A stretch of 64,000 nt of DNA from positions 28,024,001-28,088,000 of the forward strand of contig NW_025964372.1 of NCBI RefSeq assembly GCF_023055435.1, in the 5' to 3' direction. Below, piece after piece: positions 4,501 to 55,543 of this stretch. The position numbers and the translations under genes were made by a program. Within the stretch, counting starts at the first letter, position 1, and every line of letters begins with the position of its first letter. Source of the DNA: Haliotis rufescens (lineage: Eukaryota). Under the pieces are notes generated by a model. That model was not told the DNA's origin. It saw only the letters and a program-made list of their open reading frames with translations, and did no database searches.

Positions 4501-7500
4501 TCACTTCTCGTTGAAACCAAAATCAAAGGCAGCATTGACACGACCGATATCTACATTGGTAAGACCAGCGTTGTTTTCAAACGCTGCACGCTGAACGTCA
4601 TCGTCCACAAACTTGTTGGTGACCTCGCTGTGGGAAGCGGACCTTCCGCTGACCTGAACTTCACAGAGAGTTAAGAGGTCGTTGCTGTCGACCATACTGG
4701 TCTTCTGGATCTTGATGAAGCGGCCAACGGCGGGATAGAAGCAGTTGACGGTGAAGTTCGCTCCTGCAGCGACGTTGCCAGTGATGCTACCACAGAGATG
4801 TGGGAACTCCAGGAACTTGAAGGGGTCCTTTATAAGGATCCCGACGTCGATGTTGCGGAGACGCTCGGCTGTTGAAGACAATGACGTCACCGTGTCATAC
4901 AGGCAAAATCACAGGGCACAAATAAATCGTCTTCAGGTCATATTAACAAAGGTATAATTCTCAAAACTATTAAGATAGGATTGGTATGTTGGAAAATCAA
5001 TGTAAATAACGTGGCGCTGTGATGCTAAAGCCCAAGGTAGAGTTACATATTAATTAGATATAACAGGATTTTTATAGTCATAAGCTCAAAGACAGCATGT
5101 CATAACATCCAAACCGTACTGATTCATGAACACACTATCGACCAACAACATGCACAATATTGTGCACGTCGCTAAAACATGTAATGTTATTACATCCAAA
5201 TTAATTCAATAGATTGGTTGGTTGGTTTGTTGTTTTACGCCGCACTCAGCACTATTCCAGCTAAATGACGGCGGTCTGTAGATATCGAGTCTGGACCAGA
5301 CAATCCAGTCACTGATATCATGAGCATCGATCCACGCGAGTCAGCGATCCCGTTAGTCGCCTCTTTCGACAAGCATAGTGGCCTTTTACGGCAAGCATGG
5401 GTTGCTGAAGACCTATTCTACCCCGGATCTTCATGGGTAAAACATGGGACACAACGATGTAATGCTTACCACAACAGTCGCCTCTGTTGGTGACGGTGAC
5501 GGAGCTGATGTAGTAGTAGGCGCCGAGGTCGATGTAGAAGGTGGGAGTTAAATCACCAGTGGTGCTGGAGAAACAGCTCCTTCCGGTGACGAACTGGCTG
5601 TCAAAGTTGCCGTCCACGGCGAGGCCAGGGGAGGCAACCAGGTTGGCGGCAGCGAAAGTAAACTGCGAGGTAGCGCGCGCTGGGCGATTCAGGGCGACGT
5701 TGGTGGGATTGACACCGTTAAATTTCGCTGAAATTGCAGAAATAGAATACAACTTACGTGGTCAATACCACAGCGTATACACTTATAGGCCAAATTGTAA
5801 AGATTATATAAAGTAAAGTACGGTTATAACGAACTCAAAGGGACTACTAATTTTAGTTTGTTATAACCGTAGTTCATTGTAAGCATATATACAGTATAAC
5901 AACAGCAAATAGTCGGGACCAAAACATTTAGTTCGTTATATCCGTCAGTTCGTTATAAGCGTGTTCGTTATAACCGTAGTTTATGTATTCGTGTGCATCC
6001 AAGTCTATTTAGGAATTAGCTGTTGTGATAGTATATACAGAATCTTTTGCTTCAATCAAGCTACTAGTCAATATTGTCCAGAGACTAATCATATAATAAA
6101 ATAGATAAATAAAGTTAAAAAAAAAATATAAAAAATATTGAAAACGATAACATTTATGTTTTTTCGTACAGATAATGTTTACTCGGACAAATTCCACTTG
6201 TTTATCCAATTCGGTCTACTAAAACCTATTATTACCGAATGCTATAAACTGCATTAGGGTCAAACGGATCTGGGCCGACCTCTTTTACACAAACGATCTT
6301 TACAAATAATACAGCATGGGTATTTGGCAAGCATGTTTCCGAATGTCGAAATTCGTGTTTTACGTAAGATAGCATTATGGATAAGATAAATATATAAGAA
6401 CAGGGAAACGATTGATGACCACTGACCACTGTTAGCACATTTATACTCACGTTTGATGTTGCCTCCGGACACAACGACCTCGCAGATGGTGAGAGGGGCG
6501 GTGGCGGAGGGTTTTCTGATACGGACGTAGCGTCCAGTCACCATCGGAGAGCAGGAGAGTGAGACAGTCTGACCAAGGGCCACTCCACCAATGACCGTGG
6601 AGCAGAACTCGGGAGTCTCGGTACTGGTTGTGGGATTGAACTCAAAGACCTCGACTGTCAGACCACTCAGACGATCAGCTGAGACACAGAAGATGCACTT
6701 CTTCACATTTCAATAACACATACATTTGTCGTCCTTAATCATTTGTCTATTTAGTTAAACATATGAATACATTTGCTTTGATTACCGTGAGGCTAAGGCA
6801 TGCGTTCGTCACTATCAGGTCCAGGTTCGAAGCTCTGCGATCAGTGATTTCAAACTAGCTTCAAATGGCGAATGTCGTAAGTAGACGGCAAGTTTTGTAC
6901 AGCTGATAAATACACCTGGCATTGTTGGCTGTGATTATGATAAACCTGTGGGTTTAAATATGGCTTATGGATAAAACTTTGGTATAAATATGGCTTATGG
7001 ATAAAACTTTGGTATAAATATGGCTTATGGATAAAATTTTGGTATCAATATGGCTTATGGATAAAACTTAGGCATAAATATGGCTTATGGATAAAACTGT
7101 GGCATAAAAATGGCTTATGGATAAAATTTTGGTATAAATATGGCTTATGGATAAAACTGTGGCATAAATATGGCTTATGGATAAAACTTTGGTATAAATA
7201 TGGCTTATGGATAAAACGTTGGTATAAATATGGCTTATGGATAAAACTTTGGTATAAATATAGCTTATGGATAAAACTTTTGTATAAATATGGTTTATGG
7301 ATAAAAATGTGGTATAAATATGGCTTATGGATTAAACTTTGGTATAAATATGGTTTATGGATAAAACGGTGCATATAGATACAACTGTTGTTTTTTTTTG
7401 AAAATTGGATAAAACTGTTGGTATAAATAGGGATATGGATATCATTGTTGGAGTGGATGTAAATGTGGATATATATTTGGATATAATTGTAGGTATGGAG

Positions 7501-8406
7501 AAACATAGGAACATAAATATAGGTATGGATAAAACTGTAGATATATATATGGAATTACCTTAAACTGAATTGGTATGAGTTTAGATGTGGATAAAACTGT
7601 GGGCATGGATAATGATAAAATGTGTATATAGATATGGATAAAATGTGTATATGGATATGGATGAAATGGTGGATATGGAACTGGGAATGTGGAATACAAA
7701 TATCGATCTGAATATGGATTATATGTTTATATCTCAAAGTACGAAGGCTCCACTTATATAACTATTAACTCTTTTGAGTATACGATGCATATTGTTCTTA
7801 TGAAAAAAAACATAGAGACGTTTAGTAGAGCTTTCGCATGGTAATGGAACGTTGCTTCCCTTTATATTTTTTGGATGTGCGGGCTGTCTTGCACTGGTGG
7901 TGTATTAAGAATATGGACTATACATGTGTCTAAGGCAATGTAAACTGGTTTGACTGTCGAGTATTTATCTAACTTACCACAACAGTCGCCCCTGTTGGTG
8001 AGGGTGAGGCCGGACACGAATACCCGGGAACCCAGGTCCACGAACCAGAAGGGGTTGGGATCTGTCGCCACATCAGCGCTAGAGAAACATGAGCCGCCAA
8101 AGAAGTCGGAGTTGAAGTTGCCGTCGACGGCGAGGTTTGAGTTGGCGGTGATTGGGGGCACACCGTTGACGAAGACACTGCTCGAGCCGGTGGGGCGGTT
8201 CAGGGCGATGTTTTGGCCTGTAGGTGCAAATAGGCAAATGAAATATGACAAAAACAGTAATATGAATAATATATACTTAGTTGTATTTTATGGGGCATAT
8301 AATATGATGAGTAGATAGCTTCTAAATCAGATGGTACACGTTTCTTACCGAAGTTATTGGCGCTGGCCGCTGCGATCAGAGCTGCTAAACATATGATGAA
8401 AACCAT
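4501..8406 (-). CDS. Secreted tandem F-type lectin (2x fucolectin/FTP domain) protein, paralogue A, 383 aa
   Basis: Exons 8406-8349, 8217-7978, 6678-6451, 5727-5470, 4868-4501 (58/240/228/258/368 nt), all GT-AG and phase 1, frame intact. Signal peptide MVFIICLAALIAAASA. Both domains carry NIAL/NVAL, LAVDGN, DLG, TNRGDCC-A-D/E-R and (L/I)CEV motifs. Confidence 0.92.
5213..5436 (-). mobile_element. SINE-like family A copy in gene A intron 4
   Basis: Reverse complement of the family A consensus. Confidence 0.8.
5814..5983. mobile_element. Short MITE in gene A intron 3
   Basis: Terminal inverted repeats TAAAGTACGGTTATAACGAAC / GTTCGTTATAACCGTAGTTTA, with internal GTTATAA repeats. Confidence 0.65.
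6955..7365 (+). repeat. 30-bp minisatellite (AAATATGGCTTATGGATAAAACTTTGGTAT), ~13 units, decaying to ~7700; gene A intron 2
   Basis: Tandem repetition is visible directly. Confidence 0.93.
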
Positions 8407-8422
8407 TGTGGATGTGGTGATC

Positions 8423-12191: not shown

Positions 12192-14656
12192 ATGGTCTCG
12201 ATTGTTTGCTTGGTGGCTCTCTTAGCAGTGGCGAAAGCCAATAGTTTCGGTAGGCAACTGCTTTCATATGCATCGTATATTAAAAACGTGGTTACAAAGC
12301 CTAGAACTGCTACACCTTGGATATCGTACATACAAAACACGTTGAAGTATCGTTGGCTTTTAAACCAGTTCGTTTCAACACTAATTCTTCTCTTGCATAC
12401 CCAGGCTACAACATCGCACTGAGCCGCCCCACCGGCTCCAGCAGTGTCTTCGTCAACGGTGTGCCCCCCGTCGCCGCCAACTCAAACCTCGCCGTCGACG
12501 GCAACTTCAACCCCGACTTCTTCGGCGGCTCATGTTTCTCCAGCACTGATGTGGCGACAGATCCCAACCCCTTCTGGTTCGTGGACCTTGGTTCCCGCGT
12601 CTTCGTGTCCGGCATCACCCTCACCAACAGGGCCGACTGTTGTGGTATGTAACCTTAAATTGTATGGCTGTCCTGTGCCATAACGTGTCGTTTATCAGGT
12701 TGAGCTGACTGAATAAGAGGCGTGATAGTCGATAAACAGAGCCCTGTTTTACTTTGGCATGGCAGCGTCACTTAGCTGCATGTGCATTGCTATGTGTTTG
12801 AAACGTAAGTGTACACTGTAATTTTTCAATTATCATATCATGACGATATGGCTGAAATACTGCCGATGTGACGTTAAATATTAACTCGCTCACTCATATC
12901 ATGATGAAAGAAAGATACCATTCGAAAGAACAAATAAAATATCATGTGATTTAAATTCACATAAATTGTAATTGTAAACAATGGTGGTTTAAGAGAGGTT
13001 TTCCCAACGTTTTTTTGTGATCATAGAGGTGAACGCAACCCTATTGGAGGCCAATTTGCCATGATTCTCACACATGCATAAACGAACGACATTCAGTATT
13101 TTTTAGAATGTGTTCAAAGATACCCACTTTGAAGTATGTATCATTCCACTGCCACGACACAGGCGATAATACCAGGGTGTATATCCCAGTAATGCAACAC
13201 TGGATCGGTGGTAGCGAGCAGATGATTTTATACACAAAACATATCCCAAGAACCGTATCAACTCATGTCATATAATAAGCAAGTGATGAAGGATGGACAC
13301 ATTGTTCAAAGAAATACACGTTGGAGATTGAACAAGGCATCTACTCTTTTCAGCTGATCGTCTGAGTGGTCTGACAATCGAGGTCTTTGAGTTCAATCCC
13401 ACAAGCAGTTCCGAGACTCCCGAGTTCTGCTCCATGATCATTGGTGGAGTGGCCCTTGGTCAGACTGTTGCACGCTCCTGCTCTCCGATGGTGACTGGAC
13501 GCTACGTCCGAATCAGAAAACCCTCCGCCACCGCCCCTCTCACCATCTGCGAAGTCGTTGTTTCCGGAGGCAACTTCAATAGTAGGTATCCTTTGTCCTA
13601 TATTAAACCATTTATATTACTTTCAGCAATAGTTCTCCAGCAGAGATGGCATTGTAATTCCAATACTTGTTCAGCGTTACATACATATGATTTCATACCA
13701 ATACTTTCAATAAATGTGATATCCAAACTTTTAACATGGTAAACATAGCCGTTAAATTTGATCTTTACAGCATAACAGTAGCCATGAATGCTTCAACACA
13801 AAGTAAAGGTTCATATCAACACTTTCATTTCTTAATTTCAGAAAACTTCCTGAATATTCCTTTCTCCAACGTCGCCAGGAATCGCCCAGTACGCGTCACC
13901 TCTCAGTTTAGTCTCCCTTCCGCCAACTTGATTGCCTCCCCTGGCCTAGCTGTTGACGGCAACTTTGACAGCCAGTTCGTCACCGGAAGAAGCTGTTACT
14001 CCAGCGCCATTGGCAACACAAGTCCCACCTTCTACATCGACCTCGGCGACTACTTCAACATCCAGTCCATCACCCTCACCAACAGGGGCGACTGCTGTGG
14101 TGAGTGTTAGGATGTTGTGTTTTCTACGTCAGAGATGATCCATTAATATTGAGTCAGCCCAATCTGATAAAAAGGCCGTAAAGTTTATACACATCTTATA
14201 CTGCCATATGTTTTGAATAATAAAAGAAAATAATATACATTTAAGGTTCATGTATTTAAGTACAGAGTTACGTATGTCTATTGGCACTAAGAAAGCATGT
14301 TCTTTTCCATTAAAGCTGAACGCCTGCGAAACATCAACATCGGTACTCTTTTGAAAGACCCCTACAGGTACTTGGAGTTCCCTAAACTTTGCGGCACCAT
14401 CACTGGCAACGTCGCTGCTGGAGCTAACGTCACCGTCAGCTGCTTTGCGCCCACTGTAGCCCGCTACATCAAGATCCAGAAGACCAGTATGGTTGACAGC
14501 AATGATCTCTTGACCTTCTGTGAAGTTCAAGTAACCGGAAGGTTCGCATCCCGCAGCGAGGTCACCAACAAATCTGTTGACAACGACGTTTCTCAGGCTC
14601 TGGCTGCCAACGGAATTATTGCCAGAGCTGAAACCAATGATAACTGGAGTGGCTAG
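12192..14656 (+). CDS. Secreted tandem F-type lectin protein, paralogue B, 374 aa
   Basis: Exons 12192-12249, 12405-12644, 13354-13581, 13842-14099, 14316-14656 (58/240/228/258/341 nt), GT-AG, phase 1. Domain 1 has RADCC. AATAAA at 15086-15091. Confidence 0.92.
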
Positions 14657-22194: not shown

Positions 22195-25075
22195 ATGGTC
22201 TTCATCGTCTGTTTAGCGGCTCTCCTGGTTGTGGCGAAAGCCAATAATTTTGGTAAGTATATTCATGATATGCAGTATATGTTTACAAAGTTGGAACAGA
22301 TCTTGGAACTGTTAGGCTTCAGATATCGTATACACAAAGGCACACTGAAATCCTTGGGTGTCGTACATACAAAAGACGCTTAAGTATCGTTAAAAAATCT
22401 TTAAACCATTTATACTCCCATTCCAATTATGCAAATTTACGATTGTAAAACAGTGCGTTTCAACACTTATTCTTCTTTTGCATACCCAGGATACAACATC
22501 GCCCTGAATCGCCCCACCGGCTCCAGCAGTGTCTTCGTCAACGGTGTGCCCCCTATCACCGCCAACTCAAACCTCGCCGTCGACGGCAACTTCAACTCCG
22601 ACTTCTTTGGCGGCTCATGTTTCTCTAGCGCTGATGTGGCGACAGATCCCAACCCCTTCTGGTTCGTGGATCTGGGTGCCCGCCGCTACGTGTCCGGCCT
22701 CACCCTCACCAACAGGGGCGACTGTTGTGGTAAGCTAAAGACTCTACATCTATACCAGTTTACATTGCCATTCTGGAATCCTTTAGATATATTATAATTC
22801 TAAACACATCCGCCACAAATAATTCCTAACTCACCCATTGATAGAAATAAGCTCAGCAAAATGTTCTTATAAGATTTTGATAATGACAAGAACAAATTCC
22901 AAATATTTAGTGTAGGTGTCTTTCATCAACAATAGCTGTATTTGAACACATGAGTTCCTTATCCACATCCATATCTATGTCCATTTGTCAAGGGGGCACA
23001 GGTGTCCCAGTCGTCTGAGGCGCCACGATTCGCTGTGCAGCGTTGCCTCCCTTGGGCACGTCAGAAACCTATGATTGTGGGTTCGAATTCCGGGTCGCCC
23101 GATTATGTTTCTAGGTTTGTCAGCACCATACCCGTGCTCGTGGGTTTCACCGAAGTGGTAAACGTCTTGACACGCTGTAATATAACTTGAATAATGTTAA
23201 AAGCGGCGTTAAACCCAACTGACTCACTCCCCTTAATTGTCAAACATATATACTTACAAACCCACTTGATGACATCATTTTGCCTCACCAGAACAATGAA
23301 CAATCGATAGACAATCACTTGTCAAATATCCTGCACAAAAACACTTTGGGATGATGCATACCCTCTTGGATATTTTTGTTGTGAAGAATGAGCACGCTAA
23401 CGCATTATGGTCAATATATTGCAAAGTTGTCTTTCAGTCCTTATTTTTAACGTGAGACATTTTACTTTGAGAAGAATGCGCTCCTTGACCACACTAGCAT
23501 CTAGAGACTAGAATCGACATTTAATAAACTATATGTGCAACATGCTGTTGTGCTATTAAAATTTGAAGAAGGGCAGTGTCTGTGTTGCAGCTGATCGTCT
23601 GAGTGGTCTGATGATCGAAGTCTTTGAGTTCAATCCCACAACCAGTACCGAGACTCCCGAGTTCTGCTCCATGGTCATTGGTGGAGTGGCCCTTGGTCAG
23701 ACTGTTTCACTCTCCTGCTCTCCGATGGTGACTGGACGCTACGTCCGTATCAGGAAACCCTCCGCCACCGCCCCTCTCACCATCTGCGAAGTCGTTGTTT
23801 CCGGGGGCAACTTCAATAGTATGTATCCTTTGTCCTATATGAAACCGTTTACATTTAAATTCAGCGATAGTACTACCATAGTATGTTTGCGAGTCCTAAA
23901 ATGTATTTACACGGTAATCAGTAATGTATATTACTCAAACAGAGAGGGAAGAGTAATCTTAAAAATATAATTGTTAACAATATTTTTTTCTTGTACATAT
24001 ATTATCATATGGATGTGATTTCAAAACGTGGAAAACTTGATCAGTCGAATTGGTCCTTCACATCCATTTGAAGTCAGGCATGCTCTACACAAAGCCCGTT
24101 ATTAATATCAACTCTTTTTTTTATATTTCAGATAAATTTAATAAATTTCCCTCCACCAACGTCGCCCTGAATCGCCCAGCGCGTGCTACCTCTCAGTTTA
24201 CTTTTGATGCCGCCAACCTGGTTGCCTCCCCTGGCCTGGCTGTGGACGGCAACTTTGACAGCCAGTTCGTCACCGGAAGAAGCTGTTACTCCAGCGCCAT
24301 TGGCGACACAAACCCAACCTTATACATCGACCTCGGCGCCTACTATTACATCAGCTCCGTCACCGTCACCAACAGAGGCGACTGTTGTGGTGAGCATTTT
24401 CACGTTGTGTTCTTGTGTTCCTTAAGATACATTTCTTCACGCTGGAAATACACATCAAAGTTAGTAAAGAATGCTTATTTAGGTTCAGCAATATGTGTGT
24501 GTTTGAGTTGGGCTTAACGCTGTATTGAGCAGTGTTCAGTCATATCACGGCGTGTCAGCTAAAGATTATAGTGAAGCCCGAAGTGATGCAGGCCTCAGAC
24601 GTTTGCAACTCTCGTGAAACGTGACCATTATGATACATGTTAATATATTTGAGGAGTACACAGTAATAATATACATGTCTTCTGATACGAAATGAGCATT
24701 TTCTTTACAATTCCAGCTGAACGCCTGCGCAACATCAACATCGAAACTCTTCTGAAAGACCCCTACAGGTACCTGGAGTTCCCTAAACTTTGCGGCACCA
24801 TCACTGGCAACGTCGCTGCAGGAGCTAACTTCACCGTCAACTGCTTTGCGCCCACTGCAGCCCGCTACATCAAGATCCAGAAGACCAGTATGGTTGACAG
24901 CAATGATCTCTTGACCCTCTGTGAAGTTCAAGTAACCGGAAGGTTCGCATCCCACAGCGAGGTCACCAACAAATCTGTTGACAACGACGTTTCTCAGGCT
25001 CTGGCTGCCAACGGAATTATTTCCAGTGTTGAAACCAATGATAACTTGAGTGGCGGGAATCGGGCTGTTAATTAA
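22195..25075 (+). CDS. Secreted tandem F-type lectin protein, paralogue C, 380 aa
   Basis: Exons 22195-22252, 22490-22729, 23591-23818, 24132-24389, 24717-25075 (58/240/228/258/359 nt), GT-AG, phase 1, intact frame. Confidence 0.92.
22992..23230 (+). mobile_element. SINE family D (internally deleted) in gene C intron 2
   Basis: Has a GGTTCGAATTCC B-box and a GCGGCGTTAAA/(ACTC)n tail; same intronic position as the copies in D and E. Confidence 0.7.
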
Positions 25076-32572: not shown

Positions 32573-32588
32573 GATCCAATCTTCCACC

Positions 32589-37359: not shown

Positions 37360-38870
37360 ATTTGCAGCCATGTTAGTCTACAACGGAACAACAAAACAAC
37401 AGAATCAGTCATTGGTTTGACGAAGAGAACAGTTTATATGAAGAAGAGGCTTGATATAGAAAGGTTATAGAGCCACAGATTATGTTTGGTACTTAGTTAA
37501 AAAGTATTAATTTTGTTCATTGATTCTAAGGCTTTTGACAGTGCACAACATCACCTGTTAAAATATGTACATGTACTTCTACTATTAGAGCATTAATAGC
37601 AAGTGTTTTGGGGTGATTTTATCCGTGTACAGACAACTAAAATCATGTGTACCAGTTGGTAGATATATTAACATAATCCGAGTTCTTTGATGGTAGGTGG
37701 GTCCTAGGCAAGGTTGTATGATCAGGCACACACTATTTACTTTGTTTCTAAATGATCTTGTTAAACTAATACAGCACATAGATGTTTGCTGATGATATTG
37801 TGAATACTAGTTAAACTGTTGTTATATTACAGGAACAGACTGTGAAGCAGGCTTTTGGGACGAATATATTATGAATATACATGTATATTTAGACAAGATA
37901 CAGGTTACTGTGTTTCGCGGAGTAGTCAAACAAACTAAAAATAGTGATTCAAAGGTTAAAAACCTGAAATTGTATAAACATACAAGAATTTGTTTTTCTT
38001 ATTCAAAGTTATCATGGGGTTTCACTAGAAATACTTAAGCACAACAAGCTGAAAAGCCATGACTATTCTGCTCAAATATACTATATAAAATTATGACAAT
38101 CGCTATAATAAAATCTCTGTTTTTGTTTGCCAGAATGATTGTGCCAGTCCTTTTTTATGGATCAGGTTTATGGGGTTATGAAGTCCTATCAGTGGAAAGT
38201 GTACGCATTAAGTTCGTAAGAATAATATTGTCAGTTAACACAAATACAAATAATGCAGCTGTAAATGGTGACACAATAGAATATGTAATATGTGTGTCAG
38301 GATAAATTTCTTAATGTTTGACTCCAGGCAATAAATGTTATTGCGTATGGTGAATGTGGTCGTTGCCCTTTGTATCTTAACGCTCTGTGTAGAGGTGTTA
38401 TTTAACTGAAACTGATAGAGATGTATGATGGTAGGATACTGAGAAAAGCTAACAATATGCTTTCATGATATAATTCTGGATAAAATAATTATGTGGCAAA
38501 TATGTTCGATCTTTGTTATTTTCAAACGGATTTGGATTTGTGTGTTTATCCCAATCAGTTAGTGATAAAGTAGCTTTTCTTAAGGTATTTAAACATGCAC
38601 GGATAAATATGGATTTGCAGTCCTGGAATAACATCTTAAACAATAGTTCCAGGTACAGACTGTATAGACTGGTTTAACTATAAAAAAATATCTATCTGTA
38701 ATCTAAGACAAGAAACATCGTAACATGATCATTTGACTTAGAATATTACACACCGAAAATGTTCTGTCAATATCCAACCCTGAATAAGTGTCAAATGCTA
38801 CTATGTGGAAATTGTGAATTATTTCTGAAGAAACTATGTAAATTTGTGTCGCAAAGAGACAGAGAGTTTA
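37360..38870 (+). mobile_element. Decayed LINE (RT) relic
   Basis: Broken motifs KAFDS, GPRQGC, LFLNDL, MFADDIV and GECGRCPLY. Duplicated at ~44200-45830. Confidence 0.7.
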
Positions 38871-38872
38871 TA

Positions 38873-39468
38873 TACTCAACAACAAAAGTTCCTGTGACAC
38901 CAATAGGTTAGTGTATTTTTTAAACAAGTACAGTTTGGTTTTCAATATTGTAGTACATGTATGGAATCAAGTCACAAAAACGCAACTGCTACAGAAAAGC
39001 ATACATGTACATTCCATGCAAAAGTTGACTTTTATGCAAGCCCCATGCATTTCACTACCCAAGAATGGGTATGCGTTTACTGGATTCCATATGCATTGTT
39101 AAGCATCGCGCTGACAAAAAACACTTAGAAAAACAACAAAATTACGCAATTATTCAACATTACGAAATGCCACGTCTGTCCGAAAATGAGCATCTGCGAG
39201 CTATTGGTATGCTTGAAACAGGATCGAGTCAATGTGATGTTGCAAGGCAATTTAACGTCCACAGAAACACCATTTGGTGTTTATGGCAACGTTGGCAACA
39301 GACGAATGCAGTCAGAGACCATCCTCGGAGTGGCAGGCCACGCTGAACCAGTAATCGACAACACTACTGGATTCGAACAACACACCTACGAAATCGATTC
39401 CAGCCAGCAACAGTGACTGCAAGAAGCATCCCTGGCCTTCGACGAATATCTTCATAAACCGTACGTCT
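38873..39468 (+). mobile_element. 5' fragment of a Tc1-like DNA transposon with transposase pseudogene (ATG 39167)
   Basis: Begins at a TA. Translates as MPRLSENEHLRAIGMLETGSSQCDVARQFNVHRNTIWCLWQRWQQTNAVRDHPRSGRPR*TSNRQHYWIRTTHLRNRFQPATVTA, i.e. the paired-like HTH and GRPR motif of Tc1 transposases. It has in-frame stops and no DDE domain. Confidence 0.85.
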
Positions 39469-39585
39469 TCTGTTGGGTATGCACCCTTCCCTGGACCCTG
39501 TCATCATGAGCACTTCCTTATTTCACTAATGATAATGACACTAAGTGTATTACGCCATTATTACGTTGTGAGGTCGGCTCCTACG

Positions 39586-39622
39586 TATATAAACTGTGAT
39601 TCGCAATCACTGGTCATCATTC
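39586..39622 (+). promoter_or_regulatory. TATA box + initiator of gene E
   Basis: TATATAAA then TCATTC, CCACCATGG start context. Confidence 0.6.
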
Positions 39623-39638
39623 GATCCAATCTTCCACC

Positions 39639-42600
39639 ATGGTCTTCATCGTGTGCTTAGCGGCTCTCTTCGCAGTGGCGAAAGCCAATAATTTCGGTAA
39701 GTATATATACATCATATGCATCATGTCTTAAACTAAGTGCCCAGAAAGCTTAGAATTGTTGAAATTGAGATGTCGTACATACAACACGGTGAAATATCAT
39801 TCATTCTCCAATCCAAATATGCAAGTTTGGCTTTAAAACAGTGCGTTTCAATACTAATTCTTCTCTTGCATACCCAGGCTACAACATCGCCCTGAATCGC
39901 CCCACCGGCTCCAGTAGTGTCTTCGTCAACGGTGTGCCCCCCATCACCGCCAACTCAAACCTCGCCGTCGACGGCAACTTCAACTCGGACTTCTTTGGCG
40001 GCTCATGTTTCTCTAGCGCTGATGTGGCGACAGATCCCAACCCCTTCTGGTTCGTGGATCTGGGTGCCCGCCGCTACGTGTCTGGCCTCACCCTCACCAA
40101 CAGGGGCGACTGTTGTGGTAAGTTAAAGACTCTACATCTATACCAGTTTACATTGCCATTCTTGAACCTATTGGATATATTACAATTCTAAACACATCCA
40201 CCACAAAGCATTTAAATGAAATAAGCTCAGCAGAAAGTTCTTCTAAGCATTGGGTAATGACAAGAATCAAATCCAAATATTCAGTGTAGGTGTTTTTCAT
40301 CAAATATAGGTGTATTTGAACATATGGGTTCCTTATCAATATCCATATCTATGTCAATTGGTCAAGGGGGCACATGTGTCCCAGTCGTCTGAGGCCCCAC
40401 GATTCGCTGTGCAGAGTTGCGTCCCTTGGGCACGTCAGAAACCTATGATTGTGGGTTCGAATTCCAGTTCGCCCCGATTATGTTTCTAGGTTTGTCAGCA
40501 CCATACCCGTGCTCGTGGGTTTCACCGAAGTGGTAAACGTGTGAGACCTAAATCACTTCGGGCTTTCCTCCCACATTAAGCTGACACGCTGTGGTATAAC
40601 TTGAATAATGTTAAAAGCGGCGTTAAACCCAACTCACTCACTCACTCTAACATGGGAAACTTACAACCCCTCTTGTTGACATCCGCCGCTCAACGTCCTC
40701 AGTCCACCCATGCCCGACACATTACAAACTATCAAACCAGTTTTGTTCATTGGATAATGACAGGAATATAATCAAAATATGCCGTATGTTTCTATCATCA
40801 AATATAATTGTATGTGAACACTTCAGTTATATCTATGTCACTATGACAAACAAATTATTCATTATATACTTATAACTACCCTGGGTGATCATATGGCGTC
40901 ACGAGATCAATCAACCAACACCATTGATAAACGTTCACGTGTCTATATATCCTGAACAAAAAAAGTAAAATGTGACAGATTACAAATAAGGATTGAAAGA
41001 CAACTTTGTAATATATTATATACGTCAGGTGTCATGAATATTTTGGGGGATATTTTTTATAGTGAAGACTGAGCACACAATTTCATAAAATACCCGCCAC
41101 AATATTCATGATTCCCAATGTCCTTTGTTCCATGTATTACAAAGTTGTCTTTAAATCCTTACTTGTAATCTATTTCATTTTACTTTGAGAAGAAATCTCC
41201 CCGAACCTGACAACTCCGAAAGGAAGGATTTGAATGAATACATTCTTCAGTTTGGGACAAAATGAATCACATAGCCATAGCTTACGACATTCGACTCTAA
41301 CATTCGTAGCATTTGATCTGCAGATCCCATTGTACATGCCATTAAGTCATTCCAAGACCGCACTGTCAAGAGATTTGTTTTACCAAGTGGCTACCTCGGC
41401 ATACATATAAGAGAATCGACATAGAATAAACTATATGTGTAAATCAAAGAAACCCTGCTGTTGTGTTATTGTGATTTGAGGAATGACATCTTCTATCGTC
41501 TTTTACAGCTGATCGTCTGAGTGGTCTGACAATCGAAGTCTTTGAATTCAATCCGACCACCAGTTCCGAGACTCCCGAGTTCTGCTCCATGGTCATTGGT
41601 GGAGTGGCCCTCGGTCAGACTGTTTCACTCTCCTGCTCTCCGATGGTGACTGGACGCTACGTCCGTATCAGAAAACCCGCCGCCACCGCCCCGCTCACTA
41701 TCTGCGAGGTCGTTGTTTCCGGAGGCAACTTCAATAGTATGTATCCTTTGTCCTATATGAAACCATTTACATTTACATTCAGCGACGGTACTACCGTACT
41801 ATGTGTGCGAGTCCTATGATTTATTAGAAAACGGTATTCAGTTATGTACATTACTCATGCAGTAAGGGAAGGGCAGTTCTTAAAAATGTTACTTAGTTAT
41901 TATTGCTGGTTTGGGTCTGAGAGCTACATTTGTATTATATAAACATATAGATATGGACTCCAAACTTGGTAAACTTGTTCAGTCGTATTAAACATTGAAA
42001 TCAGTCAGTCAGACCTTCATCAGCAGCCAGGTACACTTTTCATTAAGCTTGATATTCATATGAACACGTTCTCTTTACTTTCAGATCAATTCAATAAATT
42101 TCCCTCCACCAACGTCGCCCTGAATCGCCCAGCGCGCGCTACCTCGCAGTTTACTTTCGCTGCCGCCAACCTGGTTGCCTCCCCTGGCCTGGCTGTGGAC
42201 GGCAACTTTGACAGCCAGTTCGTCACCGGAAGAAGCTGTTACTCCAGCGCCATTGGCGACACAAATCCCACCTTATACATCGACCTCGGCGCCTACTTCT
42301 ACATCAGCTCCGTCACCGTCACCAACAGGGGCGACTGTTGTGGTGAGCATTTTCACGTAGTTGTCTTGTGTTCAATTTCTCCACGCTAGAAATACACATC
42401 AAAGTTAGTTAAAAATGCTTATTTAGGTTCAGCATTATGTGTGTGTTTGAGTTGGGCTTAACGCTGTATTGAACAGTATTCAGTCATATCACGGCGTGTC
42501 AGATAAAGATTGTAGTGAAGCCCGAAGTGATGCAGGCCTCAGACGTTTACAACTCTCGTGAAACGTGACCATTATGATACATGTTAATATATTTTAGGAG

Positions 42601-43016
42601 TACACTGTAATTATATAGTCTTCTGATACGAAATGAGCATTTTCTTTACAATTCCAGCTGAACGCCTGCGCAACATCAACATCGAAACTCTTCTGAAAGA
42701 CCCCTACAGGTACCTGGAGTTCCCTAAACTTTGCGGCACCATCACTGGCAACGTCGCTGCAGGGGCTAACTTCACCGTCAACTGCTTTGCGCCCAATGTT
42801 GCCCGCTACATCAAGATCCAGAAGACTAGTATGGTTGACAGCAATGATCTCTTGACCCTCTGTGAAGTTCAAGTAACAGGAAGGTTCGCATCCCACAGCG
42901 AGGTCACCAACAAATCTGTTGACAACGACGTTGCTCAGGCTCTGGCTGCCAACGGAATTATTTCGAGTTCTGGATCCAACGTTAACATGGTTGGCATGGA
43001 AGGGGCTGTGAATTAA
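39639..43016 (+). CDS. Secreted tandem F-type lectin protein, paralogue E, 380 aa (recent duplicate of D)
   Basis: Exons 39639-39696, 39878-40117, 41509-41736, 42085-42342, 42658-43016, GT-AG, phase 1. AATAAA at 43142-43147. Confidence 0.92.
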
Positions 43017-43851
43017 TCTGACGAAACTGACGAAGAAGCACATAATAAACTTCACCAACGACGAAGGTCTGAAGTGAGAGCTTAAAGCACTTTTCATCGA
43101 AACAAGCCATGGATTGTTGTGGAGTTTCTGCTATGCGTCAAAATAAATGTGAAGGTTGAATACTGAAAGCGTTTTCTCGTGTGTAGATAAATTTATATAG
43201 AGACCCCAGCGTGCGTTTCCGTAGAATAAATATCATACATTAGGAAGACAAATTGTATTAAGCGAGTCTATAAATATTTATGATACGGAAACAAACGAGG
43301 GTAATAATATCTCTATCACATAATGGCATTCTTAATTTGCTTGTCAATGAAGAAGCTTCTTACAAATGAAATGTTTGAGTACCTCGTCTCATTTACCAGA
43401 TAGCGCAAAACGTTTTGCAGCAATGTTTGTCTACATAATCACCCACACATCAGAAAACAAATATCTACACTAATTGAGAACGTCGGTCAATAATTTAATG
43501 AGTAAGCAGATATTAAATCGATGACTGGAGCTTAAAGTAATTCCTGCTGAATGACTTCATTTGTATATTTATTGTATTATATGACACAAAGTTTATCGAT
43601 ACTGGTTTATTGCATCGATACACATAAAACGTCCATGGAAGAGAATAACCAGTCTTGATTATTCTCCGAAACAGATTCCATTTGGCGTAACTGAAAACAC
43701 ACTATCCATTAAATGATAAACAAAAGTCCGGTGTCATTCAAACGAAACACATACATGTATCTGATTTTGATTTTGTGTATTCAAAAGAGATCCATGTTAC
43801 ATTTACATTTATCTATTGCAAATTCAATTAAGCTACCCCCAACCTTCAGGT

Positions 43852-44002
43852 AGGGGCGGTCGGGTAGCCTTGTGGTTAAAGCGTTCGCTCGTCACGCCGA
43901 AGACCCGGGTTCGATTCCCGACATGGGTACAATGTGTGAAGCCCATTTCTGGTGTCCCCCGCCATGTTATTGCTGGAAAATTGCTAAAAGCGGCGTAAAA
44001 CG
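43852..44002 (+). mobile_element. Family C tRNA-SINE (duplicate of 37008-37158)
   Basis: Near-identical sequence and flanks. Confidence 0.85.
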
Positions 44003-44199
44003 TTTTATACATTGTTTGTAGAACATTTCAGCCACTCCTAGTTGGATATCATACAAAATATGGATTCATAACAAACTACTGCAGTGTGTATTTACATAAA
44101 TGTTTCTTATGAGCAGTATTCCTGGTGATTCCCAGCTCTACAGCACAAGAAGAACATATAAAATAATAGTCATTAAAGGGAAGAAGTCATAGTGCGCCA

Positions 44200-45830
44200 A
44201 ATGATTTGCAGCCATGTTAGTCTACAACGGAACAACAAAACAACAGAATCAGTCATTGGTTTGATGTAGAGAACAGTTTATATGAAGAACAGGCTTGATA
44301 TAGAAAGGTTATAGAGCCACATGTAATGTTTGGTGCTTAGTTCAAAAGTAGTAATTTTGTTCATTGATTCTAAGGCTTTTGACAGTGCACAGCACCACCT
44401 GTTAAAATATGTACATGTACAAGTATTTTGGGTGTTTCATCCGTGTACAGACAACTAAAATCATGTGTACCTGTTGTTAAATATATTAACATAATCCGAG
44501 TTCCTTGATGGTAAGTGGGTACTAGGCAAGGTTGTATGATCAGGCACACACTATTTACTTTGTTTCTCAATGATCTTGTTAAACTAATACAGCATATTGA
44601 TGTTTGCTGATGATATTGTGAATACTAGTTATACTGTTGTTATATTACAGAAACAGACTGTGAAGCAGGCTTTTGAGACGAATATGGTATGAATATATAT
44701 TTAGACAAGATACAGGTTACTGTGTTTCGCGGAGTAGTCAAACAAACTAAAATTTTTGGTTCAAAGGTAAAAAACTTGAAATTGTATAAACATATGTTTT
44801 TTTTATCCAAAGTTATCATGGGGTTTCGCTAGAAATACATAAGCACAACAAGCTGAAAAGCCATGACTATTCTGCTCAAATCTGTATATACAATTATGAC
44901 AATCGCTATAAAAAAATCTCTGTTTTTGTTTGCCAGAATGATTGTGCCAGTCCTTTATTATGGATCAGGTTTGTGGGGTTATGAAGTCCTATCAGTGGAA
45001 AGTGTACGCATTAAGTTCCTTAGAATAATATTGTCTGTTAACACAAATACAAATAATGCAGCTGTATATGGTAACGCGATAGAATATGTAATATGCGTGT
45101 AAGAATATATTTCTAAATGTTGGACTCCAGGCAATAAATGTTATTGCGTATGGTGAATGTGGTCGTTGCCCTTTATACCTGAACGTTATGTCTACAGGTG
45201 TTATGTAACTGAAATTGATAGAGATGTATGATGGTAGGATACCGAGAAAAGCTAACAATATGCTTTCATGATATAATTCTGGATAAAATAATTATGTGGC
45301 AAATATGTTCGATCTTTGTTATTTTCAAACGGATTTGAATTTGTGTGTTTCTCCCAATCAGTTAGTGATAAAGTAGCTTTTCTTAAGGTATTTAAACATA
45401 CACGGATAAACATTGATTTTCAGTCCTGGCATAACATCTTGAACAATAGTTCCAGGTACAGACTGTATAGACTGGCGTAACTATATTAAACAATTTCTAT
45501 CTGTAATCTCAGACAAGAAACATCGTAACATGATCATTAGCCTTAGAGCCGGATTGTTAAAACAGAAGGTAAATGAAGGTAGATGTTTAGGAATAGAGTT
45601 GTCGCTTCGCACATGTGCTGTATACAAACAGAACATGGTGTAGAACATGTATGACCTCAGGGAATATTACGTACCGAAAATGTACTGTCAATATCCAACC
45701 CTGAATAAGTGTCAAATGCCACTATGTCGAAATCGTGAAATATTTCTGAAGAACCTATGTACATTTGTGTCGCAAAGCTATGCCAAGAGACAGAGAGTTT
45801 ATATATGCAGGTTTACCGTGGCTGAATATG
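44200..45830 (+). mobile_element. Decayed LINE (RT) relic, longer copy
   Basis: Motifs EEQA, GTRQGC, MFADDIV and LRAGLLKQKVNEGR; retains a segment that is deleted in copy 1. Confidence 0.7.
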
Positions 45831-51527: not shown

Positions 51528-54500
51528 TTATTTGCCAGAACCCCTCTCGGAAGTGATTTGAACAGGTGAGGGCAGCATGGCAACGTTTCCTTTGTTCACA
51601 GAAATGCCATTGGCTACCAGAGCCAGAGCAACGTCGTTGTCAACAGATTTGTTGGTGACCTCGCTGTGGGATGCGAACCTCCCGGTTACTTGAACTTCAC
51701 AGAGGGTCAAGAGATCATTGCTGTCAACCATACTGGTTTTCCGGATCTGGATGTAGCGGGCTACAGTAGGCTGGTTGCAGTTGACGGTTGTGTCAGCTCC
51801 TGCGGCGACGTTGCCAGTGATGGTGCCGCACAGTTTAGGGTACTCCAGGTACCGGAAGGGGTCTTTCAGAAGTGTACTGACGTTGATGTTGCGCAGGCGT
51901 TCGGCTGAAACATTAACAATTATTTTTATTCCACATTGACGGACGTGTTAGTCTTCAATTAAGGGGATGAAAATAATTTGGAGCATACGCCGTTACTTTC
52001 AAAATGGTCAGACTTTATTTATTCTATGCATTGGTATACCTATATAAGACTCGTCAGTTAAAAGTATTTTAAGTATGACACTTGTCTGCAGTTTTACAAC
52101 GGCCTAAATCGTCGGATCTCACCAACAAGTCTTCTCTGACGTGTGTGAGTGAGTCAGCCAGTGAGTGAGTGAGTGAGTTAGTAAGTTTCAACGCAGGTTT
52201 AAACATGTTGTTGTAACTGACATTAAATAATAAATTATTTTATTATTAATAACAGATGTTTCTAATTGCATATAACATTTTGAAACAGATATAACGTCCC
52301 CCTTAAACAGTATTTTTGTCACATCACGACGTCAGCTTAGTGAGGGACGGTGGGGTAGCCAATTGGTTAAAGCGTTCGCTCGTCACGCCGCAGACCAAGG
52401 TTTGATTCCCCACATTGGTAGAATGTGTGAAGCTCATTTCTGGTGTTCCTCGCCTTGATATTGCTGGAATATTGCTCCAATCGGTGTATATAATCGGATC
52501 GAGGGACGGGATTCGAAAACACGATCATCTGATCCTGGCACGACGAAGGGAGATAATACTTCACACTTAATCACAGCGTGTTCATGCCACTGGGCCATAG
52601 TCTCCTATAATTGCGGGGATTGATTACATCGACATTGTACTTACCACAGCAGTCGCCCCTGTTGGTGATAATGACGGAGTTGATGTAGTAGTAGGCGCCG
52701 AGGTCGATGTATAAGGTGGGATTTAAGTCACCAGTGGCGCTGGAGTAACAGCTTCTTCCGGTGACGAACTGGTTGTCAAAGTTGCCGTCAACAGCTAGGC
52801 CAGGGGAGGCAATCAGGTTGGCGGCCTCGAAATTAAACTGCGAGGTAGCGCGCACTGGGCGATTCAGGGCGACGTTGGTTGTTGGTGGAATATTAGGGTC
52901 TGAAATAAACAATTTTTGCCAACATTTTAACTTCCGTGAGCAAAACTAAATTTATTTGGTTGTGAAATTTACCAATAGTTGCAAAAACTACAGAAAGCAG
53001 TTACGGAGGAGGTTGGCGTGGTGAAACTGTGATCGAGTCGGTCCAGTGATTTACACCATGAACATCGAACTGTGATCAGGAGAAAAAGTTTTCACTTTGC
53101 GGAGCTTAGAATCCCGAGTTCAAATAATTCTGTGACGTCAGGATCAATGTCAGAATAGGTTAGAATAGACTCCCGTCGCATTCGTCGGTCATAAGTGGCG
53201 ATCTAATTAATGGAGTTGTCAGACTCGGTGACTTGGCTCATAATTTCAATCACTGGATTGTCTGCACCAGAGTCGATTCTTTATAAGCCGACAACATACA
53301 GCTGGAATATTGTTGAGAGCGACGTTAAATAGAAATACCCAAAATACGCAATTATTCATGCGCATGACAAGCCTATAGCATATATACATTTATGTAAAGG
53401 CTATTCTTGTATATGCATATGGCAATATTTGTATGATAATAGCACACAGGATTCATCACATTACTCACGGTAAAAGTTGCCACCGGAAACAACGACCTCG
53501 CAAAGTGTGAGCGGGGCGGTGGCAGAGGGCTTGCTGATTCGGAGGTAGCGTCCAGTGGTCAAAGGAGAACATGCGAGTCCGATTGACTGACCAAGGGCCA
53601 CCCCGCCACTTAACGTTGTGCACAATTCAGGCGTCTCAGCGCTTGTAGTAGGATTCATCTCAAACACCTCGACTCTCAAACCACTCAGTCGGTCAGCTGA
53701 AATGAAAGAAATACATGATGATAACAAACTGCCGGGCACATGAGATTCGGCCATGAATTTGGAAAATACCAGATTCTGATTGGTAAATCAGAGATTATCA
53801 AATCACAATAAACCCCATCTGATTGAAATAGCCGATTTGACGGCCGTATAGCCGCGGAAGCTTATAGCTATAGAAGAGTACTTTTTTCAGTTATTGTCAG
53901 GCATATTTAAATAATCATATGTGCAGTTATAGGCTACAAAATGCAAAGATGCCGGTACTATAATATTCAAAGAAAGTGTGGCAATACATTTCGTGCAGAA
54001 AACACAATTATCTACAAAAAGAATGAATTTAAAGCATTAGATTCCAATTCAATTTAATGCGGTTAAATCTACAGGTGCTCCACAGAGCCCTACATTGAAA
54101 ACACGGTATGTTTATTTCCAAGGTATACACTCTTGATTGGTGGAGTCTAAAAATCAAACAAACAAGTGCAAGACACTTTATAAAACACAAACTCTTGAAG
54201 TGCGGTGGTATTTATTTGGACTGAGGGTTGTGTTTTCTTTGTTTGCATTCTGGCGAATAATGTTTGTTTAATTCATGCATACTATAATGAAAGATCAGGT
54301 AAATGTCTGTCCACATTACGGTGAGTGAATTATTGGTTTTACTGCCGCCTTACACTATTTCAGTAATATCACGACGTGTCAGCTTGGTGTGGGAGGAAAA
54401 CCCGAAGCGATGCATTTCTCAGACGTTTACCGCTTTAAAGAAACACAGGAGCCCACAAAGCTAGAAACATAATCGGGTCAATCCCCATTACAAATCATGG

Positions 54501-55543
54501 ACTGAGATAAACGGATACTCGCACAGGCAAGGGACCCTACTTTTTAAAAAAAAATTTTTTTTATTCAATTCAGTATAAGATATTACAGAGTTATACATTG
54601 AGTATACTGTGGTATACTCATTAAGTATAGGTTACAAACCTATACAGCAGACAGCAAATCGGCACTACTTCTTTACTGATGCAACGGTAACACACGAACA
54701 TAAAGAAACATTACTGTCTACGCATTCGCTAAGCCGGACGATGTTACTGGAAACGCTATGGTTCAGATAAACGGGGTTCGTATAATGTATATTTGTTACC
54801 GAAATAAACAGATGGGATTTTCAAAATGGGATAATCTTCGAGATAAGTCGTATTTCGAAACACTAGGCTGTTTAATACATCACATTAACTTACCGCAACA
54901 GTCGCCTCTGTTGGTGATGGTGACGCCTGAGACGTAGACGCGAGACCCCAGGTCCACGTACCAGAAGGGGTTAGGATCTGTCGCCACATCAGCGCTGGAG
55001 AAACATGAGCCGCCAAAGAAGTTGGAGTTGAAGTTGCCGTCGACGGCGAGATTAGAGTTCGCGGTGAGGGGGGGCACACCGTTGACGAAGACGCTGCTGG
55101 AGCCGGTGGGGCGGTTCTGCGCGATGTTGGAGCCTAAAGGTTCAAGGAGATGATATGTGTTAAAACGCAGTTTTATAAGAATTAATTCAATATCAGCACA
55201 TATGCATTAGAATCAGGCTAGAACGCCAATACATAATTAAATGGATTTTACGAAGGAACCGTGATTCAGTTATCACACTTGTTAATCCGGACGTTCTCAC
55301 AAGGAACCGCATTACCAGGATTTACAGGATTAACAGAGCTCAGCGTACTAAAAACATGTTAGAAAGTACTTGACGATACGGAAAGGCATACTTTCCAATA
55401 CGTCGGCTCTATAATTGTATCTAGTAGTTAATGTAAATCTTAAACTTTCGGATAAATTTATGTCAAATCTTCACTTCCTACTTACCGAAGTTATTGGCGC
55501 TTGCCACTGCTACGAGAGCTGCTAAACACACGACGAAGACCAT
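51528..55543 (-). CDS. Secreted tandem F-type lectin protein, paralogue F, 385 aa (most divergent)
   Basis: Exons 55543-55486, 55133-54894, 53696-53469, 52899-52645, 51904-51528 (58/240/228/255/377 nt), GT-AG, phase 1. Signal peptide MVFVVCLAALVAVASA. Minus-strand AATAAA at 51193-51198. Confidence 0.92.
52343..52480 (+). mobile_element. Family C tRNA-SINE in gene F intron 4
   Basis: Head GGGGTAGCCAATTGGTTAAAGCGTTCGCTCGTCACGCC. Confidence 0.7.

What the first reader, a model, noticed from the sequence alone, without database searches (positions are those of the whole stretch)
4501..55543. Six-gene cluster of secreted double F-type lectins that all lack the fucose-binding histidine
Seen: six intact genes, each a signal peptide + 2 FTP domains + tail. 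All 12 domains read SC(F/Y)SS where canonical fucolectins such as eel AAA read C-x-H-T. They keep RxDCC-A-(D/E)-R, the LAVDGN Ca site and six Cys. The Ser-to-Arg spacing is 29 residues in domain 1 and 27 in domain 2, against the canonical H-x26-R. Known: the His/Arg/Arg triad of H-x26-RxD-x4-R/K binds fucose. Inference: this is an expanded, purifying-selected family with a remodelled pocket that binds a different glycan or has a non-lectin role (mucus or adhesive, shell matrix, gamete recognition or immunity). It is the best candidate in the window for an undescribed system.
Basis: partly seen in the sequence, partly recalled or inferred. Interest (0 to 1): 0.8.

Follow-up and report, generated by a model that had tools for sequence, protein, structure and literature searches.

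The report
Abalone double F-type lectins lacking histidine
Six neighbouring, expressed red-abalone genes encode secreted proteins with two fucose-lectin-type domains whose sugar pocket has a serine in place of the usual histidine; this is a real but uncharacterised abalone branch of a well-known lectin family in which such pocket changes are common.

Summary
The window is Haliotis rufescens DNA. It holds six intact five-exon genes (374-385 aa). Each encodes a signal peptide, two F-type lectin domains (FTLDs) and a variable tail of about 45 aa. All six spliced models are identical to RefSeq "uncharacterized protein" records (LOC124143476-79, -515, -516).

All 12 domains read SC(F/Y)SS. HMMER alignments to eel agglutinin put the first of the two serines at His52. 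Arg79, Arg86, the Cys82-Cys83 pair, the Ca2+ ligands and all six cysteines are kept. Several family members contain no histidine at all.

The genes are spliced and transcribed, and pairwise dN/dS is 0.08-0.47. Close relatives were found only in four Haliotis species.

- About 40% of RxDCC domains in the nearest 150 FTLD proteins also lack the His.
- Ser-Arg-Arg domains occur in acorn worm, gar and nemertean proteins.
- Reviews already note such deviations, and a frog fucolectin-like protein binds galactose.
- The six genes are one end of a roughly 600-kb super-cluster of His-less FTLD genes.

Ligand and tissue remain unknown. Other windows of this genome hold other FTLD clusters, not this family.

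The parts
4501..8406 (-). Gene g1 (LOC124143476, 383 aa): signal peptide + 2 FTLDs + tail. Exons 8349-8406, 7978-8217, 6451-6678, 5470-5727, 4501-4868. SCFSS at 8078-8092 and 5564-5578.
   Evidence: Identical to P0273 / XP_046368429.1. An assembly gap (N, 4222-4360) lies about 140 nt past the stop codon.
12192..14656 (+). Gene g2 (LOC124143479, 374 aa). Exons 12192-12249, 12405-12644, 13354-13581, 13842-14099, 14316-14656. SCFSS at 12530-12544, SCYSS at 13991-14005. Domain 1 has RADCC.
   Evidence: Identical to P0156.
22195..25075 (+). Gene g3 (LOC124143477, 380 aa). Exons 22195-22252, 22490-22729, 23591-23818, 24132-24389, 24717-25075. SCFSS at 22615-22629, SCYSS at 24281-24295.
   Evidence: Identical to P0269. 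Transcript contigs join exactly at 22728/23590 (+1), 23818/24132 and 24388/24716 (+1).
32589..36162 (+). Gene g4 (LOC124143478, 380 aa). Exons 32589-32646, 32829-33068, 34460-34687, 35038-35295, 35804-36162. SCFSS at 32954-32968, SCYSS at 35187-35201.
   Evidence: Identical to P0272.
39639..43016 (+). Gene g5 (LOC124143515, 380 aa). Exons 39639-39696, 39878-40117, 41509-41736, 42085-42342, 42658-43016. SCFSS at 40003-40017, SCYSS at 42234-42248.
   Evidence: Identical to P0271. 99.2% amino-acid identity to g4, dS 0.04.
51528..55543 (-). Gene g6 (LOC124143516, 385 aa). Exons 55486-55543, 54894-55133, 53469-53696, 52645-52899, 51528-51904. SCFSS at 54994-55008, SCYSS at 52739-52753.
   Evidence: Identical to P0005 / XP_046368473.2. 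g6-type exon junctions appear as loose ends in run X1.
32417..45547 (+). Recent tandem duplication of about 7.05 kb that made g4 and g5. Units are 32417-38742 and 39469-45547, 94-97% identical including introns.
   Evidence: Self-BLAST.

Best explanation
This is a Haliotis-lineage tandem cluster of six transcribed genes. Each encodes a secreted, acidic protein of about 39 kDa made of two tandem F-type lectin domains and a poorly conserved, probably disordered C-terminal tail.

Each domain keeps the F-type jelly-roll fold, the three disulfides including the vicinal Cys-Cys, the Ca2+ site and two of the three basic pocket residues (Arg79 and Arg86 equivalents). The third, His52, is a strictly conserved Ser. 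The loop that follows it is longer by 3 residues in domain 1 and by 1 residue in domain 2.

Most likely (inferred, not shown) the proteins still bind a carbohydrate in the same shallow pocket, and work as soluble bivalent or multivalent lectins that cross-link glycans on microbes, food or the animal's own secretions. Their specificity would be shifted away from plain alpha-L-fucose, because the hydrogen bond from His to the axial 4-OH is gone and the neighbouring loop is remodelled.

Shown: gene structure, expression, fold, motif state, purifying selection, restriction to Haliotis among available sequences. Inferred: sugar binding, changed specificity, biological role.
For: Gene models and identity to RefSeq proteins.

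Spliced transcripts: they are present in three of four runs, and a 961-nt contig spans exons 2-5.

Family membership: Pfam PF22633 scores 110 bits and PF00754 71 bits, both above cut-off. HMMER gives FBP32 E 1e-28 and AAA E 1.5e-20, with Ser aligned to His52 and R-G-D-C-C-x-x-R aligned.

Fold: AF2 model with pLDDT 81 and the tail below 50. Foldseek gives 3CQO E 2e-25 and 1K12 TM 0.83 with rmsd 2.0 A.

Constraint on the pocket: the SS pair, RxDCC and the following Arg are invariant in all domains of 12 proteins from 4 species, and between domains only about 50% identical. The same SCFSS + RGDCC is present in six further single-domain genes upstream. Domain entropy is 0.37-0.42 against 1.3-1.6 for linker and tail, and dN/dS is 0.08-0.47. 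A dead pocket would be expected to drift.

Precedent: a frog fucolectin-like lectin binds galactose, not fucose (PMC2674504). A review states that motif deviations may mean a different specificity or a loss of binding (PMC5712786).

Role of the triad and of the Cys-Cys pair in fucose contact: PMC12221842.
Against: No binding data exist, and the tools return no model coordinates, so the pocket could not be inspected.

Ser is shorter than His and cannot reach the same atoms without a water molecule or loop movement.

The proteins are acidic (pI 5.0-5.7), which gives no support to a polyanionic ligand.

The tissue of expression is unknown, so an immune, digestive, mucus or gamete role cannot be ranked.

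Conservation of the motif could equally reflect a structural need (the Cys-Cys pair and Arg residues packing the loop).
Confidence: 0.5

Rival explanations
1. These are ordinary fucose-binding lectins. Ser plus a bound water, or the two arginines alone, are enough to hold fucose, so the His loss has little functional consequence.
For: Arg79, Arg86, the Cys-Cys pair and, in domain 1, the aromatic pair aligned to Phe45/Tyr46 are all kept. Ser can donate and accept hydrogen bonds. The Ser-Arg-Arg combination recurs in unrelated animals (Saccoglossus, Lepisosteus, Tubulanus, Gigantopelta), which suggests it is a viable pocket.
Against: The His is one of three residues that bind the axial 4-OH (PMC12221842). 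Reviews treat such replacements as a likely change or loss of binding. The loop next to the site is lengthened in both domains. In domain 2 the residue aligned to Tyr46 is Val/Thr.
Confidence: 0.2
2. These are non-lectin proteins. The F-type fold has been co-opted, as in factor V/VIII C domains, for protein, lipid or mineral binding or as a structural, adhesive or matrix component. The conserved motif then serves only fold stability.
For: The defining triad is incomplete. All six introns are phase 1, the tail is variable, and transcript contig depth is very high in some libraries but not others, as is seen for secreted structural proteins. The neighbouring array (P0084 type) has also lost Cys50.
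Against: Co-opted discoidin-type domains lose the RxDCC..R motif, whereas here it is invariant together with the rare vicinal disulfide. No family peptide occurs in the H. laevigata nacre/prismatic shell proteome supplements. There are no low-complexity or repeat regions typical of matrix or adhesive proteins.
Confidence: 0.2
3. The cluster is a decaying or annotation-only gene family without function.
For: All members are annotated only as 'uncharacterized protein'.
Against: All six reading frames are intact with canonical splice sites. dN/dS is below 0.5. Spliced transcripts exist. The orthologous lineages g1 and g6 are kept in H. asinina, H. rubra and H. cracherodii.
Confidence: 0.02

Closest known systems
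Anguilla anguilla agglutinin (AAA, PDB 1K12), the prototype F-type lectin
   Same: Same fold (TM 0.83, rmsd 2.0 A, 33% identity). It shares the Ca2+ ligands, three disulfides including Cys82-Cys83, Arg79, Arg86 and the aromatic residue at position 45.
   Different: His52 is Ser. There are 3 (domain 1) or 1 (domain 2) extra residues in the loop after it. The abalone proteins have two domains per chain plus a tail. The W-W of NPWWRVDL is F-W or L-Y. Ligand unknown.
Morone saxatilis FBP32 (PDB 3CQO), a binary tandem F-type lectin
   Same: It is the best sequence and structure match (E 1e-28; Foldseek E 2e-25). The secreted two-FTLD architecture is the same.
   Different: FBP32 keeps the His-Arg-Arg triad in both domains and has lost the Cys-Cys pair in one domain (PMC5712786). 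The abalone proteins keep Cys-Cys in both domains and lack His in both.
Ranaspumins Rsn-3/-4/-5 of tungara frog foam nests (fucolectin-like)
   Same: They are secreted fucolectin-family proteins with altered pocket residues. Rsn-4 agglutinates erythrocytes but is inhibited by galactose and lactose, not fucose (PMC2674504). This is a precedent for changed specificity.
   Different: They are single-domain vertebrate proteins with different substitutions: Rsn-4 keeps His but lacks CC, and Rsn-5 has Leu at the His site. They are not orthologous.
Non-canonical FTLDs noted in reviews: Drosophila CG9095 (furrowed) and five Crassostrea gigas FTL isoforms lacking the basic triad
   Same: They are FTLDs that deviate from H-x26-RxD-x4-R/K, interpreted as changed specificity or loss of binding (PMC5712786).
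   Different: Those lose two or all three basic residues. The abalone family loses only the His and conserves its replacement strictly.
Ser-Arg-Arg FTLDs in other animals: Saccoglossus XP_006824724 (4 domains C-T-S-T...RLDCCETR), Lepisosteus, Tubulanus, Gigantopelta
   Same: They have the same triad state, Ser + Arg + Arg with CC kept.
   Different: They mostly have the canonical x26 spacing with no loop insertion, different architectures, and at most 35% identity. All are uncharacterised as well.

Membership tests
F-type lectin domain (FTLD / fucolectin-tachylectin-4-pentraxin-1) | Significant profile match to the family | tested here: met
   PF22633 scores 109.9 bits (cut-off 27.8) and PF00754 70.7 bits (cut-off 28.2), two stretches each. 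phmmer against PDB gives FBP32 1.2e-28 and AAA 1.5e-20.
F-type lectin domain (FTLD / fucolectin-tachylectin-4-pentraxin-1) | F-type beta jelly-roll fold | tested here: met
   AF2 model with mean pLDDT 80.9, domains mostly above 85. Foldseek gives 1K12 TMt 0.83 with rmsd 2.0 A, and 3CQO E 2.4e-25.
F-type lectin domain (FTLD / fucolectin-tachylectin-4-pentraxin-1) | Ca2+-binding residues (AAA Asn35, Asp38, Asn40, Ser49, Cys50, Glu147) | tested here: met
   By alignment, D, N, S-C and the E of CEV are invariant in all 12 domains. The Asn35 position is Leu, a backbone ligand in AAA by my recollection. Metal binding itself was not tested.
F-type lectin domain (FTLD / fucolectin-tachylectin-4-pentraxin-1) | Three disulfides including the vicinal Cys82-Cys83 | tested here: met
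   Six Cys per domain at the aligned positions, 12 per mature protein. The bonds themselves are inferred.
F-type lectin domain (FTLD / fucolectin-tachylectin-4-pentraxin-1) | Fucose-binding motif H-x26-R-x-D-x4-(R/K) | tested here: not met
   Ser stands at the His position in 12 of 12 domains. Spacing is x29 and x27. R-x-D-C-C-x-x-R is kept. No His lies inside the domains.
F-type lectin domain (FTLD / fucolectin-tachylectin-4-pentraxin-1) | Binding of alpha-L-fucose or fucosylated glycans | not testable with these tools
   This needs recombinant protein, a glycan array and haemagglutination inhibition.
Binary tandem F-type lectins (FBP32-like) | Secreted chain with two tandem FTLDs | tested here: met
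   Signal peptide plus two FTLDs. The domain tree shows that d1 and d2 are each monophyletic across Haliotis species, so the architecture arose independently of the fish proteins.
Discoidin / F5-F8 type C non-lectin domains | Loss of the basic triad and of the Cys-Cys pair, with membrane or protein binding | tested here: not met
   Arg79, Arg86 and Cys-Cys are invariant. Matches to factor V/VIII and neuropilin are much weaker than those to FTLs.

The most novel reading that the evidence does not exclude
The strictly conserved Ser-for-His pocket with a lengthened flanking loop would define a new carbohydrate-specificity class of the F-type fold. It would have arisen once in the abalone lineage and then expanded to 25 or more genes in three architectures in one roughly 600-kb locus. 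Its ligand would be a glycan that matters specifically to abalone, for example a substituted or sulfated fucose of their brown-algal diet, or a microbial or gamete glycan.
Probability: 0.2. Interest if true: 0.55.

Novelty: new variant of a known kind. Interest (0 to 1): 0.3.

Why it matters
F-type lectins are defined by one short fucose-binding motif, so natural families that change a single triad residue and then conserve it strictly are useful natural experiments on how the fold is retuned.

This abalone locus offers at least 18 SCFSS-type domains plus a sister array of about 15 genes, all derived from one ancestor. That is a compact set for glycan-array work. It may also point to a ligand relevant to abalone immunity, feeding or reproduction, in species that are farmed and, for some, endangered.

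The practical gain is modest. The genes are already annotated, similar deviations are known in other phyla, and nothing here points to a new mechanism.

Tried and rejected
1. Another His filling the pocket: rejected. P0151, P0152, P0156 and P0157 have no His at all, and most others have His only in the linker or tail.
2. Exon skipping that would make hybrid single domains (all introns are phase 1): rejected as unsupported. The joint 22729->24719 with 'CC' between fits a g1/g6-type exon 4-5 junction laid on the near-identical end of exon 2. The joint with '486 letters between' equals exons 3+4 (228+258) of a diverged paralogue. So there is no evidence for skipping.
3. Shell-matrix role: motif and tryptic-peptide strings were searched in the 28 supplement files of the H. 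laevigata shell proteome. Only an unrelated large FTLD protein matched.
4. Limpet adhesive-mucus paper: it contains no F-type lectin.
5. Literature searches by LOC or XP numbers and by family peptide motifs: no papers. Searches for 'fucolectin' or 'F-type lectin' with abalone or Haliotis found nothing on this family.
6. Bishnoi et al. 2015 (Glycobiology) is not held in the library.
7. Tissue of expression: run, sample and study names are coded, so it could not be learned.
10. A sulfated-glycan ligand inferred from charge: not supported, because the proteins are acidic.
Full report
WHAT IS THERE

The window is eukaryotic DNA with about 40% G+C. A six-frame motif scan finds exactly twelve N-terminal half-domains carrying A-V-D-G-N, SC(F/Y)SS and R(G/A)DCC, and twelve C-terminal half-domains carrying CEV(V/Q)V. 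They group into six genes: g1 and g6 on the minus strand, g2 to g5 on the plus strand.

Nucleotide context at each boundary gives six five-exon models:
- Exon 1 is a signal peptide, preceded by a TATA-like box about 50 nt upstream of the ATG.
- Exons 2+3 make FTLD 1.
- Exons 4+5 make FTLD 2 plus the tail.

All introns are GT-AG and phase 1. The intron inside each domain sits between CC and A-(D/E)-R. All six frames are intact, at 374-385 aa. The finding's coordinates, 4501 and 55543, are the stop of g1 and the ATG of g6.

HOW THE SEARCHES WERE DONE

I searched exon translations. After that I used full-length database proteins that those searches returned.

IDENTITY OF THE GENES

A profile of the 12 exon-encoded N-halves, run against 1.84 billion representatives, returned one protein with two very strong stretches (140 and 153 bits). 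The next best stretch in any other protein scores 65 bits. That protein, P0005, is XP_046368473.2, 'uncharacterized protein LOC124143516 [Haliotis rufescens]', and equals my g6 model.

All six models equal RefSeq proteins:

| Gene | RefSeq locus |
|---|---|
| g1 | LOC124143476 |
| g2 | LOC124143479 |
| g3 | LOC124143477 |
| g4 | LOC124143478 |
| g5 | LOC124143515 |
| g6 | LOC124143516 |

So the genes are already annotated, but unnamed.

Relatives at 70-100% identity exist only in H. rufescens, H. cracherodii, H. asinina and H. rubra. The next hits are generic fucolectin-domain proteins at 40% identity or less.

THE DOMAINS

Pfam places both domains in PF22633 and PF00754, above cut-off. HMMER against PDB sequences gives FBP32 (3CQO, 1e-28) and eel agglutinin AAA (1K12, 1.5e-20).

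In those alignments C-F-S-S lies on C-T-H-S of AAA. This means His52 is Ser. RGDCCADR lies on RGDCCGER, so Arg79, Cys82-Cys83 and Arg86 are kept. Three extra residues follow the SS in domain 1 and one in domain 2. The Ca2+ ligands and all six Cys are kept.

An AF2 model of P0005 (pLDDT 81) shows two jelly-roll domains and a disordered tail from about residue 346. Foldseek matches 3CQO (E 2e-25) and 1K12 (TM 0.83, rmsd 2.0 A).

No other His can substitute. Four family proteins have no His at all, and most others have His only in the linker or tail.

SELECTION AND AGE

Pairwise dN/dS over pooled exons is 0.08-0.47. dS runs from 0.04 (g4/g5, a 7-kb tandem duplication that is 94-97% identical including introns) to 0.56 (g1/g6).

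Column entropy across 12 proteins of four species:

| Region | Entropy |
|---|---|
| Domains | 0.37-0.42 |
| Linker | 1.6 |
| Tail | 1.3 |
| Loops just after the SS | 0.8-1.0 |

The loops just after the SS are the most variable parts inside the domains.

A protein tree groups g1 with an H. asinina gene (100/99). g6 is 81-84% identical to H. asinina and H. rubra proteins but only 73-83% identical to the proteins of the g1-g5 type. Several lineages therefore predate the divergence of these species.

A domain tree puts d1 and d2 of this family, plus both domains of a neighbouring 2xFTLD-C-type-lectin family, in one clade (100/99). d1 and d2 are each monophyletic across species (long branches were flagged, so the deeper joins are uncertain). 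This fits a single loss of the His in the abalone lineage, followed by expansion.

EXPRESSION

Four runs were laid on g3. Three of them (X1, X2, X4) hold contigs that cover only the exons. The joints fall exactly at the predicted sites: 22728/23590 (+1), 23818/24132 and 24388/24716 (+1). One 961-nt contig in X4 spans exons 2 to 5. Loose ends in X1 match g6-type exon junctions, so at least two paralogue types are transcribed.

Contig word depth is in the thousands in X1 and X2 but 0-3 in X10, which belongs to the same study as X1. This hints at library-specific expression, but the tool warns that depth is a poor measure. Run names are coded, so the tissue is unknown.

HOW UNUSUAL IS THE HIS LOSS?

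Among 480 R-x-(D/E)-C-C motifs in the 150 best relatives, 273 have a His near the canonical place and 207 do not. At the C-x-H position there are 36 Gln, 19 Ser and 14 Ala. This sample is biased toward sequences resembling the query profile.

Eleven non-abalone domains combine Ser with both Arg. They come from Saccoglossus, Lepisosteus, Tubulanus, Gigantopelta, Protopterus and one unnamed JGI/IMG protein. A frog protein even reads SCFSS, but it lacks the second Arg.

Elsewhere in the H. rufescens genome I found one canonical N-C-T-H-T domain and others reading SCFAT, SCFLS and SCFAS.

The literature already covers such cases:
- The 2017 review states that some FTLDs deviate from the motif, which may mean a different specificity or a loss of binding. 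It cites Drosophila CG9095 and five oyster isoforms (PMC5712786).
- Frog ranaspumin-4, a fucolectin-like lectin, binds galactose and lactose, not fucose (PMC2674504).

The phenomenon is therefore known. This particular family is not characterised: no paper names its loci or motifs.

THE CLUSTER IS LARGER THAN THE FINDING

The window is C594:28,024,001-28,088,000. Two further groups lie upstream:
- Directly upstream (27.978-28.019 Mb) are six more genes, each with a single FTLD that also reads SCFSS...RGDCC. Four of them repeat at about 6.7 kb spacing, and the one nearest the window is probably followed by a C-type lectin exon.
- At 27.47-27.68 Mb there is an array of about 15 genes of the P0084 type (2xFTLD + C-type lectin). 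Its domains read N-T-T-F-A-T-A at this site, with neither Cys50 nor His, but keep RGDCC-x-x-R.

MECHANISM

The SS pair, both Arg residues and the rare vicinal disulfide are invariant across domains only about 50% identical, in four species. The rest of the chain drifts. The simplest reading is therefore that the pocket is still used.

Removing the His imidazole, one of three donors to the axial 4-OH of fucose (PMC12221842), and lengthening the adjacent loop should change what fits. I therefore favour secreted bivalent lectins with altered specificity (0.5). The rivals are ordinary fucose binding (0.2) and a non-lectin co-option (0.2).

The proteins are acidic. They have 0-4 N-glycosylation sequons and no free Cys.

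The only role I could test, shell matrix, found no family peptides.

VERDICT

This is a real, expressed, conserved but uncharacterised abalone subfamily of a well-known lectin family. It carries a pocket variant of a kind that is already documented elsewhere.

Noticed in passing
G000:C594:27978000-28019000 (loci L001-L005), just upstream of the window: Six further genes have a signal peptide, ONE F-type lectin domain that also reads SCFSS...RGDCC, and a Pro/Gln-rich tail. Four copies repeat at about 6.7 kb spacing. The copy nearest the window (L005, about 4480-5800) is followed by an ORF that looks like the start of a C-type lectin domain (8219-8476).
   Followed up: partly
G000:C594:27469000-27678000 and about 27953000-27959000: An array of about 15 genes of the P0084 type (LOC124143504-like: 2 FTLDs + C-type lectin, 476 aa). 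Their domains have N-T-T-F-A-T-A where Cys50 and His52 should be, but keep RGDCC-x-x-R. In the domain tree they form one clade with the window family.
   Followed up: partly
window 29366-31660: A minisatellite of 42-bp units, about 55 copies at 79% match. It produces long artefactual ORFs on both strands (for example 29433-30629).
   Followed up: partly
window 1832-3278: A second tandem array with a period of about 28 bp, copies about 92% identical, seen in the self-BLAST.
   Followed up: no
window 22913-23239 and 24548-24656 (introns 2 and 4 of g3): Interspersed repeats, one with a tRNA-like GGTTCGAATCCCGG box. Contig word depth is enormous in all four runs (up to about 8e5). These are SINE-like elements that are transcribed or abundant genome-wide.
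   Followed up: no
window 39065-39346: An ORF with a helix-turn-helix, transposase-like N-terminus (Tc1/mariner-like fragment). It lies just before the start of the second 7-kb duplication unit (39469). A similar fragment is in L002 (4737-5033).
   Followed up: partly
window 4222-4360: An assembly gap (139 N) about 140 nt downstream of the g1 stop codon, so the 3' UTR of g1 is incomplete in this assembly. I left it as it is.
   Followed up: no
L007, L008, L010 (other chromosomes/regions of G000): Other abalone FTLD exons read SCFAT, SCFLS and SCFAS at the His site, while L006 reads the canonical N-C-T-H-T. His-less 'SCF-x-x' domains are therefore widespread in this genome.
   Followed up: partly
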